Notes: a model not told the origin generated them from the sequence alone. Shown: positions 48,912 to 55,742, counted from the first letter of the stretch. The stretch: DNA of 64,000 bases from Epithemia pelagica (GCA_946965045.2 OX337236.1:682001-746000); one strand, 5' to 3'. Translations and numbers: made by a program.

Positions 48912-51736
48912 TTTTGGAGAATGGACACTTGATTCAACCAAAAGTCTTTTGGGAAGTGACTCTGGTAAAGAAAAAGAGAAATGCCTTGTGTGACAAGCAA
49001 ACACGTTGACGACAAACACCTCAAGTCTGGTTCTGTCAAACGAGAGAGTGTGTGAAGAAGATGACTGCAACACGGTCCATTCTTGTCAATCTTGGAAAAA
49101 ACGATGGACCGAATGGCATGCCCGACCAACAGTGATCCAACAGTGATGGAAAACGTGCCTGTGGGTGGCAGTCGTGCTACTTGTTCCGTCTCGGCTGGTT
49201 GTTGGTCGGTAGTTGTGTCTTTGGACGAATCGAGTTCCATCCGATGCTGTCGTCGTCGTTTTCACGAGATGATTTGTTTCCACGACAAAACTTTATGGGG
49301 GGACAATGACGACACACAAGTTTTGTTCCATCCTCCTTCGTCCAATCAACGGTCCAATTCTGTCGGTTGTGGTTGGCACATCCGAATGGGGTTGTCCGTT
49401 GTCCCCCAGCGGATGCGACAGCGGGACTTGAGATGGTAATTGGGGAGTCATTGCTCGAGGTGTGCAGGCGCGCCGGTCATTCTGGGGTTTGGGGGATATC
49501 CCGAATTGTGAGAAGACGATGGTTCCATCTCTGTTGTCTGTTGCGCAGCAGCAGTGATCAGTTGCGACAAGACGACAAAGAACGGCCCGACGATGCGCCA
49601 CAGGACACACAGAAACATTGAGAATACACAACGAAAGCAAAAAGCCACAGCCTTTTGAACCAATGGCTTTCTGCGATGCCATATTCCTGCAGTCAACCAA
49701 TTCTGTACCCATCCTTTTATCTCTGGTATCGAGAATGGATCCAAACTCCCCACGATTGACGACTTTTGAGAAAGGTCCAAGAAGAAGGAATACAAGCGAC
49801 TGGGAAAATTGTACAAGGCCCTCTCCGACGAGAAATTCCAACTTTTTCCTCGTCGTCTTGGATAGTACTCCAGAATCGGTCAAGGATTGGATCATGACCA
49901 TGTCGCAAGAAAGGACGCATCCGATGGATCCGCAAGCGATCATGTTGGAGAGTGTGCATTTTGGAACAGTCACCAAGAAGTACGCCTATACTATTGCGCC
50001 ACGTTGAGTATCCAGACATCAAGGTTGACGAGACGCATGCATTGACTCTGTTGCCGTATCACCAAAGCCTGCTGGTTTTTGCCACTTTGAGCAGTCGCAA
50101 AGCCATTGGGTGCGCGCAAGTTTGGACAGATTCAATCCTACGAGGCCAAGCAATAACAGACGCCGCCCTTTGTTTGGCAGAGTCACTGCTGTCGTGCTAT
50201 GGCAATGAGTGTCGTGGCGTTTGGTGTGGCCACCGCGTCCTTGGTGTACTTGCGCCTCTGTATGCCTACCTCTTGGCATATTCCTACAACAACCCCATTA
50301 TCGTACGCTTGTTGTCGTCTATCAACGAAGTCGTCTATCAACGAGTACCCTGGTATGCAACTGGCAGTATAATAATAATGGCTATACTTTACGGCATGAA
50401 CTGCCAACCCTTGTGTGGTATTGGGAGACGCGATTCTTGGTGAATCTATGGAAATAAGAATCATGAAAGGCATAAGGAAAGCCTACTACAAAGGATAGGA
50501 CCTTGGAAAAGAATGCAACCAAGGACCTTGGCTCGTACAAGCCTTGAGTTGGAAATCAACGTCATCCGCTTTGCCAAGACTACAGAGTTGTGGGTGAGCC
50601 TAGTCCTGATCTATATACACTTGACCAATAAAATTGAGCACTGGGTCATGACGTTGGGATTGAAATCGTCCGCGCATGACAACATTCATGGACTTGCGCA
50701 TCTTCCAAACCAAAATCGGCTTCCATGGCAACAGACATTTCAACGCATGGACCTGACGAATAGGACCGTTGGCATCCATCGGTAGAAGTTGGCTTGTTGC
50801 AGCTGACAACGGTACGTGGTGCGAGTAATGGTAGGAGAGGACAAGAAGGACATTTCAAATGAGAATGTTTACGTATCAGGAATGAGCGGGCTGATTGCGA
50901 TAGCTATTTGCATTCTCCCTCTCGCCATTACTTGAGGTTGTAACATCCTCAGGAAACTGCTACATACGATATAGATCGTCCGGTGTCATCATCCCGCACA
51001 CTACCTACTCCTAGTTTCCTACTCCTACTCATGTCGTACTGTTAATAGGGATAAGGGACACTCCGGTAGACGGCAAACGATGTCCTTTTGTTTTCTTGTG
51101 GCGTTTACTATCCGCATCGTCTACCATGTTGAGATAAGCACCTCTACCTGCCAAGGACCACTCGACACTCGACCCAGAGTTGGAACTTCGCGATTGTTCG
51201 AACCAAAAAACACACGATCGACTTGACGACTCCGTGTCCAAACAAAAAATGAGACAACCACCCAGGCACACAAGTGGGATTCTCGTTTGAGTCTTTGAGT
51301 TGGACACAAATTGGCATTGTCGATTGTCGCTATACAAATGAGAAAAGTGACAAGTGGAAGCACATGTTCGTCCGTCTTTTTTTCGGTCGGCGGACCGATG
51401 GCGGAGCGGACGGCATGCATATGCTAAGTGTTTGAATCCATTCGAACGTGCTGTTTAGGAAACTGTCAACGGCAGGAGCCGCGCCTGTCCAAGTTTTTCG
51501 TTAAGTATTCTTCCAGTTTTCCGTTGGGGTCCCCAAAATCGGAACCAAATGAATGTTCTCGTCTCATTTTTTGTCGATGCCTTCAAGATTTTTTCCTCAC
51601 TCCCACAAAATCGCACCCAAAAAACCACTGATCAAGGATCAAGGTCATTCTCTATTGTGGACCTTATAATCCCCATATCCCTCCATAAATCACCTCTACC
51701 CATCCCGAATCCGTCACGTTAACGCCCTTGACCACC

Positions 51737-52558
51737 ATGAAGTTCCTCCTGGTACTCTGGAGTCTGTTCTCCTTGTTGCAACAGTCTGTTGCATGGTCGC
51801 CCTACGACGACTATTATCCTTCGGAAAAGAGCAAAAAGGGCAAAAAAGAAGCCGACGACTATTACTACGAGGACGATGTATACAGTTCCAAGGGCAAAAA
51901 AGAAAAGTACGACTACGACGACTATTATGACGATGAGAAATATAGCAAGAAGAAGGGAAAGAAGGACATGTACGACGACTATTACGATGATTATTATGAT
52001 GACTACTATCATCATGACGACGATTACTACGATGATTATTATGACGATGACAAGTACAGCAAGAAGGGAAAGAAGGAAAAGTACGATGACGACTACTATG
52101 GATCGGATCCGAAGAGCAAAAAGGGAAAGAAGGAAAAGTACGAGGACGATTACTACCCAGAGACTTGCTCGGTGACGGTGGAAAGCCAATGCATTGGGGA
52201 CTGCGCCAGAACTTACCACGGCGATCGCGCTCTGGGTCGCTACGGTCCTCGACATCCACAATTGATGGAAAGTGAAATGGTCCATGTCGCTCCTTATTAC
52301 AAAGGTGGACGCAAATACTTTTGTCTCGTGGCGGAACCAGGCAATTTCTGTCCCTTCAAGTATGCCACGGCCACGATATGGGTCGACTATGAGGCTATTG
52401 CCGTGGATGTCGACATGTCGGAAGAGGGCGATGGCTACCACTTCTCGGCCTACGAAGGTTCCACCATTACCGTGGTGGTGGCCATTCGGCCTGATCCTAC
52501 CATTCGGTGTATCCAACAAGGCTCCTACTGGTACTATTTGTCATCCGACTATTATTAA
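51737..52558 (+). CDS. Secreted Lys/Tyr/Asp-rich repeat protein (273 aa), cingulin/silaffin-like, with a C-terminal 6-Cys domain
   Basis: Signal peptide MKFLLVLWSLFSLLQQSVA; five SKKGKK(E/D)-type blocks alternating with YDDYY/DDDYY blocks (51794-52159); globular C-terminal region with 6 Cys. Confidence 0.85.
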   Translation: MKFLLVLWSLFSLLQQSVAWSPYDDYYPSEKSKKGKKEADDYYYEDDVYSSKGKKEKYDYDDYYDDEKYSKKKGKKDMYDDYYDDYYDDYYHHDDDYYDDYYDDDKYSKKGKKEKYDDDYYGSDPKSKKGKKEKYEDDYYPETCSVTVESQCIGDCARTYHGDRALGRYGPRHPQLMESEMVHVAPYYKGGRKYFCLVAEPGNFCPFKYATATIWVDYEAIAVDVDMSEEGDGYHFSAYEGSTITVVVAIRPDPTIRCIQQGSYWYYLSSDYY

Positions 52559-52721
52559 ACACTCACGCGAATCCACATCTAAACATTATCCAGAAAATAA
52601 ACTGTTTGTATAATGATATCTAAATGAATGCACGCCACCGATCTAATGAAAGTTGGTATAGACTGAACTTGGAACACAGCTGAGCCGTGTCTCGCTTGTT
52701 TGTACCCTTCGCAGTGCAAAA

Positions 52722-53384
52722 CTATTCGAGACGCAACAAGATATGTACTCCACTGGGTGTTTCCACAATTCCCGAAAGTTGATGCACATCTAATGCATAG
52801 GCCGCACGTTCAAATTCTGGAAACATCGTGTTGCGTTCTAATAAGCCTAAATCCCCCATCCGTTTCGCTGAACTATCATCCGATTCGTGGAGCGCCATGG
52901 TTTGGAATGTGGAAATCAAGGCGCTCGTGTCCGAGTTTGTTTCCCGCAGAGTTTGGAGCAAACGATTGGCTTCCGCAATGGCTTCCTCTCGTGTTTTCAC
53001 AATGGGCACTTGGTGATTGGTTCTCCAACTCATTGGTCGACGAGACTCACAGTGTTTCTTCAAAATGTGTAGAATGCGCACGCGTCCTCTCGAATGTTGT
53101 CGTGTTCTGGAGGTTGCCGTTGAACCAACTTTCCTTTGTCGTTTTCGAGGCCCATGGACGTCGTCCATTTGCTCGAGTTCCACTTCTTCATTATTGAGTG
53201 GCGCCGTCCACGACGACGTACCGGTCGTGACGTCAAAGTAATAAAACTGATTTGGCCTGGATCGTGATCTCTTTCGAACCCATCCCACAGGAAGCCGCTC
53301 ATTATGGGCATTTTCAATCTTGTGCCTGTTAATGTCCTGGGTCGAAATAAGATTCTCCTCAGAGAATCGCACTGTCTTGGCCAT
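52722..53384 (-). CDS. PIN1: Pin1/Ess1-type parvulin peptidyl-prolyl isomerase (WW + PPIase), 220 aa
   Basis: WW domain LPVGW...YYFDVTTGTSSWTAP; PPIase HILKKH..SRRPMSWR, ESDDSSAKRMGDLG, MFPEFERAAYAL..HQLSGIVETPSGVHIL. Confidence 0.95.
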   Translation of the reverse strand: MAKTVRFSEENLISTQDINRHKIENAHNERLPVGWVRKRSRSRPNQFYYFDVTTGTSSWTAPLNNEEVELEQMDDVHGPRKRQRKVGSTATSRTRQHSRGRVRILHILKKHCESRRPMSWRTNHQVPIVKTREEAIAEANRLLQTLRETNSDTSALISTFQTMALHESDDSSAKRMGDLGLLERNTMFPEFERAAYALDVHQLSGIVETPSGVHILLRLE

Positions 53385-53757: not shown

Positions 53758-55742
53758 ATGGCAATCAAAACCAGCCTAACCACAGAGGTTCTTGCCATTC
53801 TCTGTATCCTTTGGGGGTCTTTGTTCTTGACAAGATGCGCTGCGTCGTACGAGACGGATCAGGTGTGCCGTTCGGGCGAGAACAACGAATGTCAAGATCG
53901 AAACGACGAGAATGGTCGTGTAGAACATGGCGACGACGAAGAGTGCACATTGTACATTGCTGAATCCACCATCCCCAACGCTGGCTTGGGAACCTTTACG
54001 ACAATCCCACGTCGCATTGGTGATTTGGTGGGAATGAGCGAACTTTGCATTCCGTACGTGCATTTTGGTTACAGTGGGGGGACTGATCCCTTTTTGGATT
54101 ATGTGTGGAATGGCATGACACTGGAAATGTTTCGAGAGCATTTGTATCATGGTCATCTGGAAGCATTTTGTGCCGGTCTTGGATCGGTCGTGAATAGTCA
54201 CTCGGCCTTGATTAATGCCGCTCGGCCTCGTCCAAAGTATGATCCCTTCCTCGTACGACAAGTTCATCCAGGAGCTGGGGCACTAACGCCCTACCACAAT
54301 GCAACATCTACCATTGTTCGAGATATTCCTGCAGGGTACGTGATGATCACGTTTGAACTGTTTCATGGAAATGACATTACTCACCCATTGTGGTGCTACT
54401 CTTTGTTGGATACAACAGCGCGGAACTATTCAAAGACTATGGTGACAACTGGTTCCATCAGAGAACACCACAGATAGGTTATGTAGCTTTGACGCTGCAT
54501 TACGAATATACCGACAAACTAATCAAGAAGCTCTATGGTATAGCGATGCAGCACTCCAATGAGGAGTTGTATGAGGAACTGTACAATTTGTGCATTGCCA
54601 TTCGTGACATTTTCCAAAAAGCGCGTATTCTCAACGGTTTTCCTCCCACATTCAATCAAGCCCTCGTGGCGGCACAACAGTCCATTTCGGCGGCCCACCA
54701 ACTCGATCACATCCGCTCCAATGAATGGCTCCAAACACATGGCCGATGCGTGGATACCATTGTGTCCAAGGATTCCACAATTCCCGGTGCAGGTCGAGGT
54801 GCCTTTGCCAAGACAACCATCCAACAAGGACAAGTCGTAATAACGTCACCCGTGTTGCACGCGCCACAAACAGCACATGACTTCATGGCCAAAGTAAAAG
54901 TTTCGGACGATGCCGAACTCCAAAAGCGCTTGTTTCACTGGGACAAGGTGGAATCATACCAGCTACTTCTGAATTACTGTTTTGGCCATGCCGAATCGTC
55001 TCTTCTCTTGTGTCCAAACGGTGGAGGTGTCGGTTTGATCAATCATGCAAAGAATGGTGTCGCCAATGTTCGAGTTCAGTGGGCTCAAGACTTTTCTGCG
55101 CACCGCCATGACATGGTCCACAATGCTACTCTGGAGGACTTGGAACAGGTTCATACGTCCGTCTTTCTCTTTGAATTCGTGGCGTTGCGAGATATTGACA
55201 AGGGAGAAGAGATATTAATGGACTATGGTGACGACTGGGAAAGAGCCTGGCAGTCCCATCAAGAATGGTGGCAACTTTCCGGCATTCGAGATACTCCCTA
55301 TGTTAGTGCAATCGAAATGAACCAAAAACTGAGGGACGCAGTTATTCGCACCACTTTAGAACAAGAGAAAGATCCTTACCCATCCAATGTTGAGATTCGC
55401 TGTCACCCAAACGTAGTGAAGAATAATACGTGGCACTATACATGGACGACACAGCACCATGGGCATTTGTGTCGAGTATTGGACCGGTATCCGACCGATG
55501 ATGGGAACGATTGGTTGTATCTTGTCGATGTGGAGGTGTGGCCTTTTGAATATGTTATGTTTCGACCTCCGCAAAAGCGCCAAGCCCATGTGGGACAACT
55601 TACCAGGGGCCGTGTCCCGCGACGGGCCCTCCGATTTTTCGACGTACCCGGAACAACCGATCTTCATATGACGTCAGCCTTTCGACATTGGATTGGAGTA
55701 CCAGATGATATATTTCCTGATCAATGGCGGAATAAAAAGTGA
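53758..55742 (+). CDS. Signal-peptide-bearing tandem (double) SET-domain protein, diatom type; intron 54336-54418
   Basis: Signal MAIKTSLTTEVLAILCILWGSLFLTRCAAS. SET1: ESTIPNAGLGTF...VVNSH...RDIPAG|AELFKDYG. SET2: STIPGAGRGAFA...LINH...VALRDIDKGEEILMDYG. The 83-nt intron is phase 2. Confidence 0.85.

What the first reader, a model, noticed from the sequence alone, without database searches (positions are those of the whole stretch)
51737..52558. Secreted zwitterionic Lys/Tyr-Asp block copolymer: candidate new biosilica protein
After the signal peptide, 122 residues alternate five polycationic KxxK-rich blocks (SKKGKK, KGKKEK) with polyanionic Tyr/Asp blocks (YDDYYDDYYDDYYHHDDDYYDDYY), followed by a compact 6-Cys domain. 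KxxK motifs and Tyr-rich/acidic segments are established features of silaffins and Y-type cingulins. However, this protein is Ser-poor, supplies its acid as Asp rather than phosphoserine, and adds a folded domain I do not recognise. It could self-assemble or coacervate as a silica template, or be a Tyr-crosslinked adhesive.
Basis: partly seen in the sequence, partly recalled or inferred. Interest (0 to 1): 0.8.

Follow-up and report, generated by a model that had tools for sequence, protein, structure and literature searches.

The report
Secreted lysine/tyrosine-aspartate repeat protein of Epithemia
A nitrogen-fixing (Epithemia-type) diatom has a real, transcribed gene for a secreted protein that joins a cingulin-like tail of alternating lysine clusters and tyrosine/aspartate tracts to a small undescribed six-cysteine beta-sandwich domain. 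It looks like a cell-wall protein, but nothing yet shows that it touches silica.

Summary
Window 51737-52558 (+) is an intronless 273-codon gene. It encodes a signal peptide, then 122 residues (D 26%, Y 25%, K 22%) in which five lysine clusters alternate with Tyr/Asp tracts, then a 131-residue domain with six cysteines. The blockiness exceeds composition-matched shuffles. The frame is kept in the second haplotype (pN/pS 0.16, one in-frame 15-bp indel), and a run that behaves like RNA covers the gene.

The genome is very likely Epithemia pelagica. The C-terminal domain defines a small undescribed family. Two tandem "hypothetical proteins" of E. clementina sit at the collinear locus, one of them with nine GGKKEAKSDDYY units. 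A third member is a 144-aa protein on a short contig of unknown, possibly prokaryotic, origin. All six Cys are invariant, and the model is a generic beta-sandwich of the binding-module type.

The repeat follows the logic of Y-type cingulins, and four of its five lysine blocks fit the pentalysine-cluster rule. It is not homologous to them, is Ser-poor, has no RXL site or CinY motif, and is net acidic (-14), not charge-balanced.

Best reading (about 0.45): a frustule-associated matrix protein. An adhesive role or another secretory destination remains open. The scan noted this same stretch twice (s1-230524, s1-230579) and noted other Lys/Tyr modules elsewhere in this genome.

The parts
51322..51736 (+). 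Probable 5' untranslated region
   Evidence: In run X3, which behaves like RNA, a contig runs unbroken from 51322 to 52152, while 50674-51234 has no depth. Contigs cannot fix a transcript start.
51737..51796 (+). Signal peptide, residues 1-20, predicted cleavage SVA|WS
   Evidence: This is the only hydrophobic segment of the protein. All three homologues also begin with a signal-peptide-like segment.
51797..52162 (+). Polyampholyte repeat region, residues 21-142: five units of a lysine cluster plus a Tyr/Asp tract
   Evidence: Composition and blocks come, the shuffle tests and the DNA repeat spacing. The second haplotype has an in-frame 15-bp length difference near 52150.
51827..51847 (+). Lysine cluster 1 (KSKKGKK)
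   Evidence: It has 5 Lys in 7 residues.
51890..51907 (+). Lysine cluster 2 (KGKKEK)
   Evidence: It has only 4 Lys and does not meet the pentalysine rule.
51938..51964 (+). Lysine cluster 3
   Evidence: It has 6 Lys in 9 residues.
51968..52051 (+). Longest Tyr/Asp tract (residues 78-105, with an HH pair)
   Evidence: This unit is 111 nt instead of 54-57 nt.
52052..52081 (+). Lysine cluster 4
   Evidence: It has 6 Lys in 10 residues.
52112..52138 (+). Lysine cluster 5
   Evidence: It has 6 Lys in 9 residues.
52163..52555 (+). Six-cysteine C-terminal domain, residues 143-273; its core is a predicted beta-sandwich
   Evidence: It is homologous to P0003, P0005 and P0006 with all six Cys invariant. 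The AlphaFold2 model built on that alignment has pLDDT 64 and pTM 0.63 and shows 7 strands. The first ~36 residues of the 136-residue modelled segment (protein residues 138-173), which carry 3 Cys, are not modelled with confidence.
52556..52558 (+). Stop codon

Best explanation
This is an expressed, single-exon gene of an Epithemia-type diatom, very likely E. pelagica. It encodes a soluble secreted two-module protein of a small, undescribed, Epithemia-restricted family. The conserved module is a disulfide-stabilised beta-sandwich of the kind that serves elsewhere as a non-catalytic binding module. The variable module is a cingulin-like polyampholyte in which compact lysine clusters alternate with Tyr/Asp tracts. 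I think it most likely ends up in the cell wall, either in the silica or in its insoluble organic matrix. In that model the lysine clusters, possibly methylated or polyamine-modified in the secretory pathway, act as wall or silica targeting and silica-condensing sites. The genetically encoded Asp/Tyr tracts supply the polyanion that silaffins obtain from phosphoserine, so that molecules pair block to block with each other or with long-chain polyamines. The tyrosines add cation-pi contacts or oxidative cross-links. The beta-sandwich holds the protein to a wall polysaccharide or partner protein. What is shown: the gene, its frame, its transcription, the signal peptide, the block pattern, the family and the microsynteny. 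What is inferred: wall location, self-assembly, modifications and the ligand.
For: - Gene and frame: the ORF and its signal peptide are read directly. The second haplotype keeps the frame, with 7 synonymous and 5 non-synonymous changes (pN/pS 0.16) and an in-frame indel.
- Transcription: run X3 carries a GT..AG-spliced contig in the neighbouring gene, an Illumina adapter, no depth in the upstream intergenic stretch and contigs over 51322-52800.
- Family: an exhaustive HMMER search gave P0003 and P0005 of E. clementina and P0006, and all six Cys are invariant.
- Orthology: P0005 and P0003 lie at the collinear locus, in the order gene(s), Pin1, SET, LSM, DUF1242.
- Conserved repeat logic: P0005 has nine GGKKEAKSDDYY units, although these two species are reported to be as divergent in protein identity as human and pufferfish (PMC12377750).
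- Non-random blocks: the shuffle tests are. Mixed codons show that the pattern is held at protein level.
- Literature on cingulins: they are defined by alternating KXXK-containing and Trp/Tyr-rich regions (PMC4557024). The CinY1 and CinY2 sequences show KSGK clusters between G/Y/D/E tracts.
- Literature on targeting: 5 Lys within 12-14 residues targets proteins to silica (PMC9650480), and 4 of the 5 blocks qualify.
- Literature on chemistry and precedent: polyamine-driven silica precipitation needs polyanions (PMC4557024). AC3362, found by a K/Y composition screen, proved to be a wall-matrix protein rather than an adhesive (PMC4220933).
- Fold: the best matches are binding modules, namely HA70 D3 (Z 9.0), GOLD (Z 8.4), the ColG collagen-binding domain (Z 7.6), CBM35 and PA14.
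Against: - There are no localisation, proteomic or silicon-response data for any family member.
- The protein has no homology to any known frustule protein. Ser is only 7%, there is no RXL site outside the folded domain, and the CinY 'UM' motif is absent.
- The lysine spacers are K/G/E rather than S/G.
- The region is net -14 rather than balanced.
- The repeat is dispensable in the family: P0006 has none and P0003 has a Lys/Gly/Met leader. The conserved function therefore sits in the domain, whose ligand is unknown.
- The fold matches are at the level the tool calls common (Z 7-9), and the model is of medium confidence.
- Restriction to Epithemia fits a lineage-specific role of any kind.
Confidence: 0.45

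Rival explanations
1. It is an extracellular mucilage, adhesive or surface-coat protein. In this reading it is secreted through the raphe or girdle into the polysaccharide matrix of this benthic diatom. The beta-sandwich binds sulfated or carboxylated polysaccharide, and the Lys/Tyr/Asp blocks give cohesive, coacervate-type or Ca-bridged interactions. It is not built into silica.
For: The protein has a signal peptide and no anchor. The best fold matches are carbohydrate- or ligand-binding modules. Lys plus Tyr richness was the search rule for diatom adhesive candidates, and DOPA-independent coacervation was discussed there (PMC4220933).
Against: The one candidate from that screen that could be localised was a wall protein rather than an adhesive (PMC4220933). 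The strong net negative charge is unlike the basic mussel-type adhesives. There are no adhesive-trail data.
Confidence: 0.2
2. It is a secretory-pathway protein delivered to an internal compartment peculiar to Epithemia, such as the host membrane or the space around the nitrogen-fixing diazoplast. This would be comparable to the Cys-rich secreted peptides that other hosts send to their symbionts.
For: The family was found only in the two Epithemia genomes plus one unidentified contig. It combines a signal peptide, six conserved Cys and cationic clusters. Epithemia-specific families of unknown function were the main import candidates in the diazoplast proteome (PMC12377750).
Against: The six import candidates named in that paper carry other gene numbers. 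Three of them belong to one low-numbered (presumably large) orthogroup, whereas this family looks small. The paper itself found little support for import. I could not reach its tables to check these proteins.
Confidence: 0.08
3. It is a plastid or periplastid protein. The predicted signal-peptide cleavage is followed by an aromatic residue (W, W, Y) in all three diatom members, as in the ASAFAP-type motif of diatom plastid presequences.
For: The junctions are SVA|W in the window, ASA|W in P0005 and AVA|Y in P0003. The P0003 leader is Gly/Ser/Thr/Lys-rich.
Against: In the window protein and in P0005 the residues right after the junction are acidic (D or E within 3-6 residues), unlike transit peptides. 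That the aromatic +1 residue matters for plastid import is from my own knowledge. Tyr is 25% of this region, so an aromatic at +1 is not unexpected. Six invariant Cys fit an oxidising extracellular or ER route. P0006 has QA|Q.
Confidence: 0.05
4. It is a secreted cation-binding or protective protein. In this reading the Asp/Tyr tracts, perhaps Tyr-sulfated, chelate Ca or metals or act as a heparin-like polyanion, and the protein has no structural role in the wall.
For: The Asp/Tyr tracts are long, up to 28 residues with an HH pair. From my own knowledge, Tyr flanked by acidic residues is the classic context for tyrosine sulfation in other eukaryotes.
Against: No sulfotransferase link or metal-site motif was tested or found. 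The conserved interleaving with lysine clusters is not explained by simple chelation.
Confidence: 0.1

Closest known systems
Y-type cingulins (CinY1-3) of Thalassiosira pseudonana
   Same: Both have a signal peptide followed by lysine clusters that alternate with acidic, tyrosine-rich tracts. Both are of similar small size (CinY2 is 248 aa).
   Different: No sequence homology was found. Cingulin clusters are K-S/G-S/G-K and Ser/Gly-rich, whereas here they are KKGKK(EK) with 7% Ser. Cingulin Tyr tracts are Gly-rich, whereas here they are almost pure Tyr/Asp. The 17-residue CinY motif after the signal peptide is absent. Cingulins lack this six-Cys beta-sandwich domain.
Silaffin pentalysine clusters and silacidins
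   Same: Four blocks have at least 5 Lys within 14 residues, which is the rule for silica targeting. The acidic tracts could play the polyanion role of phosphoserine or silacidins.
   Different: The repeats have no RXL processing sites and the region is not Ser-rich. Its acid is Asp encoded in the gene, not added phosphate.
AC3362 of Amphora coffeaeformis
   Same: It is a K- and Y-rich secreted protein of a raphid pennate diatom without known relatives. It was shown to sit in the insoluble wall matrix.
   Different: AC3362 is Pro/Thr-rich and has KG repeats. It has no Asp tracts and lacks this domain.
KAL7558645.1 and KAL7558646.1, hypothetical proteins of Epithemia clementina
   Same: They are true homologues, 38-44% identical over the domain depending on the method, with all six Cys conserved. 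They lie at the collinear locus, and KAL7558645.1 has the same Lys / Asp-Tyr repeat logic.
   Different: They are a tandem pair instead of a single gene. The repeat unit is a regular 12-mer in one, and is replaced by a Lys/Gly/Met leader in the other.
Beta-sandwich binding modules (HA70 domain 3, p24 GOLD, ColG collagen-binding/PPC domain, CBM35, PA14)
   Same: The predicted domain core has a similar size and strand arrangement (Z 7.5-9.0, rmsd about 3 A over about 90 residues).
   Different: There is no sequence similarity. The scores are at the level of a common fold, and the protein lacks the TM segment and coiled coil of p24 proteins. This is a fold class, not a family assignment.

Membership tests
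Cingulins (Y-type) | N-terminal signal peptide | tested here: met
   The protein has a hydrophobic N-terminus with an SVA|W junction and no other hydrophobic segment.
Cingulins (Y-type) | Alternation of lysine-cluster (KXXK) regions with Tyr-rich regions | tested here: met
   Five clusters alternate with Tyr/Asp tracts, and the clustering exceeds all 20,000 shuffles.
Cingulins (Y-type) | K(X)2-4K clusters whose spacers are Ser or Gly (PMC9650480, Table 1) | tested here: not met
   The spacers are K, G, E and one S, and Ser makes up 7% of the region.
Cingulins (Y-type) | Conserved 17-residue motif directly after the signal peptide in CinY1-3 | tested here: not met
   The motif given in the supplement of PMC9650480 is absent, and the mature N-terminus here is WSPYDDYY.
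Cingulins (Y-type) | Sequence homology to known cingulins | tested here: inconclusive
   The full-length word search gave no hit. The exhaustive search used only the C-terminal domain. Low-complexity regions are poorly searchable.
Cingulins (Y-type) | Component of ammonium-fluoride-insoluble girdle-band microrings | not testable with these tools
   This needs wall fractionation or GFP tagging.
Silaffins | Pentalysine cluster: 5 Lys within 12-14 residues | tested here: met
   Four of the five blocks qualify. The rule is taken from PMC9650480.
Silaffins | Ser-rich sequence for phosphorylation, with RXL processing sites | tested here: not met
   Ser is 7%, and the only R-x-L lies inside the folded domain at residue 164.
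Silaffins | Released from silica by ammonium fluoride; precipitates silica in vitro | not testable with these tools
   This is a biochemical test.
Epithemia six-Cys beta-sandwich family (undescribed; P0003, P0005, P0006) | A domain of about 125 residues with six invariant Cys and the motifs C-x-G-D-C, F-C-L, E-G-D-G-Y and C-I-Q-x-G-S | tested here: met
   phmmer E-values were 3.5e-20, 1.4e-15 and 3.2e-08, and alignment A2 shows the invariant columns.
p24 / GOLD-domain cargo receptors | GOLD domain followed by a coiled coil, a TM helix and a short cytosolic tail | tested here: not met
   The similarity is in fold only (Z 8.4). No TM-like window follows the domain, and there is no Pfam hit.
Mussel-type DOPA adhesive proteins | Lys/Tyr-rich, strongly basic, Gly-rich repeats | tested here: not met
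   The protein is Lys/Tyr-rich, but the repeat has net charge -14 and only 5% Gly.

The most novel reading that the evidence does not exclude
The protein is a silica-templating wall protein whose zwitterionic self-assembly is written entirely in the gene, with Asp tracts in place of phosphoserine. Its lysine clusters are methylated by the ER-targeted SET-domain enzyme that has stayed two genes away in both Epithemia species. Its anchoring domain was acquired from bacteria. This would be a substrate-modifier pair and a modification-light route to biosilica patterning.
Probability: 0.1. Interest if true: 0.7.

Novelty: new variant of a known kind. Interest (0 to 1): 0.4.

Why it matters
If it is wall-bound, it would be a natural silaffin/cingulin analogue that carries both charges in its primary sequence. 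A plain recombinant protein might then self-assemble and template silica without phosphorylation or added polyanion, which is useful for biomimetic silica work. It would also show how fast diatom lineages reinvent wall proteins. The same Lys / acidic-Tyr logic appears here in a family unrelated to cingulins, attached to a folded domain that has a possible prokaryotic relative. If it is not wall-bound, it is one of roughly a thousand Epithemia-specific families (PMC12377750) and a candidate for biology peculiar to these nitrogen-fixing diatoms. As it stands it is a well-documented candidate, not a discovery.

Tried and rejected
- **Family and sequence searches that gave nothing.** Pfam and NCBIfam on the whole protein and on the domain gave nothing. 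PDB searches by sequence and by profile gave only chance-level rows. The ESM Atlas search by features gave no usable hit.
- **Word-index protein searches.** The full-length query, the domain region and the profile gave nothing beyond P0003 and P0006. The window protein itself is not in that collection, so paralogues in this genome could be invisible.
- **P0004.** This 2128-aa Bacteroidota T9SS protein with thirteen 84-residue repeats scored 1.7e-17 in phmmer. I rejected it because the score is a sum over near-identical repeats, and hhalign gives 6.7% probability over 28 columns. P0007 and P0008 are repeat artefacts.
- **Bacterial origin of the domain.** L005 has two short signal-peptide genes and an AT-rich spacer. 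The promoter/terminator scan, NCBIfam, Pfam and the Atlas were all uninformative. Scans of GTDB genomes and JGI metagenomes with the profile and with P0006 found no relative. The origin is left open.
- **Structure.** The single-sequence AlphaFold model was useless (pLDDT 33).
- **Opposite-strand ORFs.** ORFs of 266 and 181 aa lie over the repeat on the opposite strand. I rejected them as mirror images of the Asp/Tyr codons, because homologues, the signal peptide and pN/pS all support the + frame.
- **SET linkage as evidence of function.** The block Pin1-SET-LSM-DUF1242 is collinear as a whole. This gene and Pin1 lie tail to tail and share no promoter with the SET gene. The linkage is therefore explained by descent.
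- **Supplementary tables.** The tables of the Epithemia genome paper are not held.
- **Literature search for the motif strings.** It found nothing relevant.

Full report
**What is there.** Window 51737-52558 (+) is one open frame of 273 codons plus stop.
- Signal peptide: residues 1-20 are MK, a 12-residue hydrophobic core and the junction SVA|WS. No other hydrophobic or TM-like segment exists.
- Repeat region: residues 21-142 are D 26%, Y 25%, K 22%, S 7%, E 7%, G 5%. Five compact lysine clusters of the SKKGKK(EK) type are separated by Tyr/Asp tracts of 10-28 residues, and the longest tract carries an HH pair.
- C-terminal domain: residues 143-273 have ordinary composition with six Cys at 144, 152, 156, 196, 205 and 258.

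The one correction concerns charge. The repeat has 27 K against 41 D+E, a net charge of -14, and the mature protein is about -20. It is a blocky polyampholyte, not a balanced zwitterion.

**Is it more than chance and is it a gene?**
- Shuffles: in 20,000 composition-preserving shuffles of the 122 residues, none reached the observed lysine clustering and 7 reached the observed charge segregation.
- DNA repeats: the region is five diverged copies of a unit spaced 54-57 nt, with one copy expanded to 111 nt. The units use mixed synonymous codons (GAC 20 / GAT 12, TAC 17 / TAT 13, AAG 20 / AAA 7). The pattern is therefore kept at protein level and is not a simple DNA microsatellite.
- Second haplotype: the same ENA assembly holds a second haplotype (L002). 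Its product is 96% identical, with 7 synonymous and 5 non-synonymous differences (pN/pS about 0.16) and one in-frame 15-bp insertion in the last Tyr/Asp tract.
- Transcription: one of the four public runs holding this DNA (X3) behaves like RNA. It has a contig that skips 54335-54417 with GT..AG ends in the neighbouring gene, an Illumina adapter at a contig end, and no depth over the upstream intergenic stretch 50674-51234. Its contigs cover 51322-52800. I take the gene as transcribed. Contigs cannot give level, strand or ends.

**Whose genome.** The flanking genes are collinear with contig JBGMNV010000359.1 of Epithemia clementina. The order is this gene, a Pin1-type WW-rotamase on the other strand, a SET-domain protein with a signal peptide, an LSM protein, a further conserved stretch, and DUF1242. 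The LSM and DUF1242 segments are 85-93% identical at protein level, and Pin1 is 42% identical overall. The published description of the Sanger assembly of E. pelagica gives 60 Mb and 48.2% GC, and describes it as strongly diverged from E. clementina (PMC12377750). That matches the window (GC 0.45-0.52). Notes of other agents on this genome also call it Epithemia-type. I therefore treat it as E. pelagica or a very close relative.

**Relatives.**
- Negative results: no Pfam, NCBIfam or PDB sequence match exists.
- True homologues: the exhaustive HMMER search with the C-terminal domain found three. P0003 (211 aa) and P0005 (260 aa) are KAL7558646.1 and KAL7558645.1, 'hypothetical proteins' of E. 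clementina. They lie in tandem at the collinear position. P0006 (144 aa) consists of a signal peptide plus the domain only.
- Shared features: in the alignment all six Cys and the motifs CxGDC, FCL, EGDGY and CIQxGS are conserved.
- Origin of P0006: it lies on a 1.3-kb Logan contig carrying two short signal-peptide genes separated by an AT-rich spacer. This looks prokaryotic, but I could not place it. Scans of GTDB genomes and JGI metagenomes found no further relative.
- Rejected hit: a Bacteroidota T9SS giant (P0004) scored well only because thirteen near-identical repeats add up, and profile comparison does not support it.
- Conclusion: the family is small, undescribed and so far confined to Epithemia plus one unplaced sequence. 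Transfer from bacteria is possible but not shown.

**The folded domain.** With the five-sequence alignment, AlphaFold2 gives pLDDT 64 and pTM 0.63. The model has a seven-strand beta core at pLDDT 75-87. The first ~36 residues of the 136-residue modelled segment (protein residues 138-173), which carry three of the Cys, remain unmodelled. Fold searches return only generic beta-sandwich binding modules:
- botulinum HA70 domain 3 (Z 9.0)
- p24 GOLD domains (Z 8.4)
- clostridial collagen-binding/PPC domains (Z 7.6)
- CBM35
- PA14

Foldseek E-values are about 1e-3 and TM about 0.4-0.57. The tool itself rates such Z values as common. I read the domain as a disulfide-bonded, non-catalytic binding module with unknown ligand.

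**The repeat compared across the family and with known wall proteins.**
- Within the family: P0005 has nine regular GGKKEAKSDDYY units. P0003 has instead a short Lys/Gly/Met leader. P0006 has none. The Lys / Asp-Tyr alternation is thus conserved between two species whose orthologues are about as diverged as those of human and pufferfish (PMC12377750). It is nevertheless the variable module of the family.
- Cingulins: they are defined as alternating KXXK-containing and Trp- or Tyr-rich regions (PMC4557024). The CinY1 and CinY2 sequences in the supplement of PMC9650480 show KSGK-type clusters between G/Y/D/E tracts. That is the same logic.
- Pentalysine rule: four of the five blocks here satisfy the pentalysine-cluster rule for silica targeting (PMC9650480).
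- Differences: the clusters are KK-dense with K/G/E spacers. Ser is scarce. No RXL site precedes or separates the repeats. The CinY-specific motif after the signal peptide is absent, and there is no detectable homology. This is convergence in design, not membership.

**Mechanism proposed.**
- Shown: a secreted, soluble, expressed protein with a conserved folded domain and a conserved block-polyampholyte design.
- Inferred: the lysine clusters direct it to nascent silica or its organic matrix and, if modified like silaffin lysines, promote silica condensation. The Asp/Tyr tracts act as a built-in polyanion that pairs with lysine clusters of neighbouring molecules or with long-chain polyamines, whose silica-forming activity needs polyanions (PMC4557024). 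The tyrosines add cation-pi contacts or oxidative cross-links that would make an insoluble matrix. The beta-sandwich ties the assembly to a wall polysaccharide or protein.
- Precedent: the Amphora protein AC3362 was picked by K/Y composition as an adhesive candidate and then found in the insoluble wall matrix (PMC4220933). This is the main empirical reason to favour wall over glue.
- Weights: I put about 0.45 on wall association, 0.2 on mucilage or adhesive, about 0.1 on a cation-binding or protective secreted role, 0.08 on an Epithemia-specific internal destination such as the diazoplast surroundings, and 0.05 on plastid or periplastid targeting. The last is prompted by the aromatic residue after the predicted cleavage site in all three diatom members, but the sequence that follows is acidic.

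**The neighbouring SET gene.**
- Gene structure: this other note on the stretch (s1-230579) concerns a real two-exon gene, with exon 1 at 53758-54334, an intron at 54335-54417 seen in run X3, and exon 2 at 54418-55742. It has a signal-peptide-like start and a SET domain in exon 2. The E. clementina orthologue has the same features.
- Literature link: diatom-specific secretory SET methyltransferases are co-expressed with wall formation in Seminavis (bioRxiv 10.1101/2020.11.23.393678), so a lysine-rich substrate next door is suggestive.
- Against a functional link: the whole six-gene block is collinear, and the two genes are separated by Pin1 and share no promoter. The linkage is explained by descent alone. 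I searched the exons separately and did not search a joined model.

**Verdict.** The protein is a new variant of the silaffin/cingulin-like class, carried on an undescribed six-Cys domain family. It is of moderate interest, among many such candidates noted in this genome.

Noticed in passing
window 53758-55742 (+): This is a two-exon gene for a SET-domain protein with a signal-peptide-like N-terminus. The 83-nt GT..AG intron at 54335-54417 is confirmed by a spliced contig of run X3. The automatic gene calls on the ENA contig split it into two genes of 291 and 398 aa. The E. clementina orthologue (662 aa) also has the signal peptide.
   Followed up: partly
window 51908-52050 (read ends): In all four runs, including the RNA-like one, contigs match only about 20 nt of the Tyr/Asp-coding DNA. 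They then run on into unlike sequence that encodes GKKGYDDDYYYD and DDYYYGDDDY. This suggests at least one expressed paralogue with the same Lys / Tyr-Asp design elsewhere in the genome, possibly the stretch noted as s1-238857.
   Followed up: no
window 52722-53384 (-): This is a Pin1-type peptidyl-prolyl isomerase (WW plus rotamase, 220 aa). It lies tail to tail with the studied gene, with only 163 nt between the two stop codons, so the 3' UTRs probably overlap (contig 52476-52800 in every run).
   Followed up: partly
L003 1100-5400 (E. clementina, upstream of P0005): There are long ORFs of a retroelement or tyrosine-recombinase-like element directly upstream of the tandem pair. Collinearity with the window ends there, which fits the reported repeat expansion of E. 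clementina.
   Followed up: no
window 51630-51643: A 7-bp unit (GATCAAG) is present twice in this haplotype and once in the other. It is one of several small indels in the probable 5' UTR.
   Followed up: no
L005 788-1267: The gene beside P0006 on the unplaced Logan contig encodes another signal-peptide protein with no family match. Its nearest Atlas clusters are all bacterial but score weakly.
   Followed up: partly
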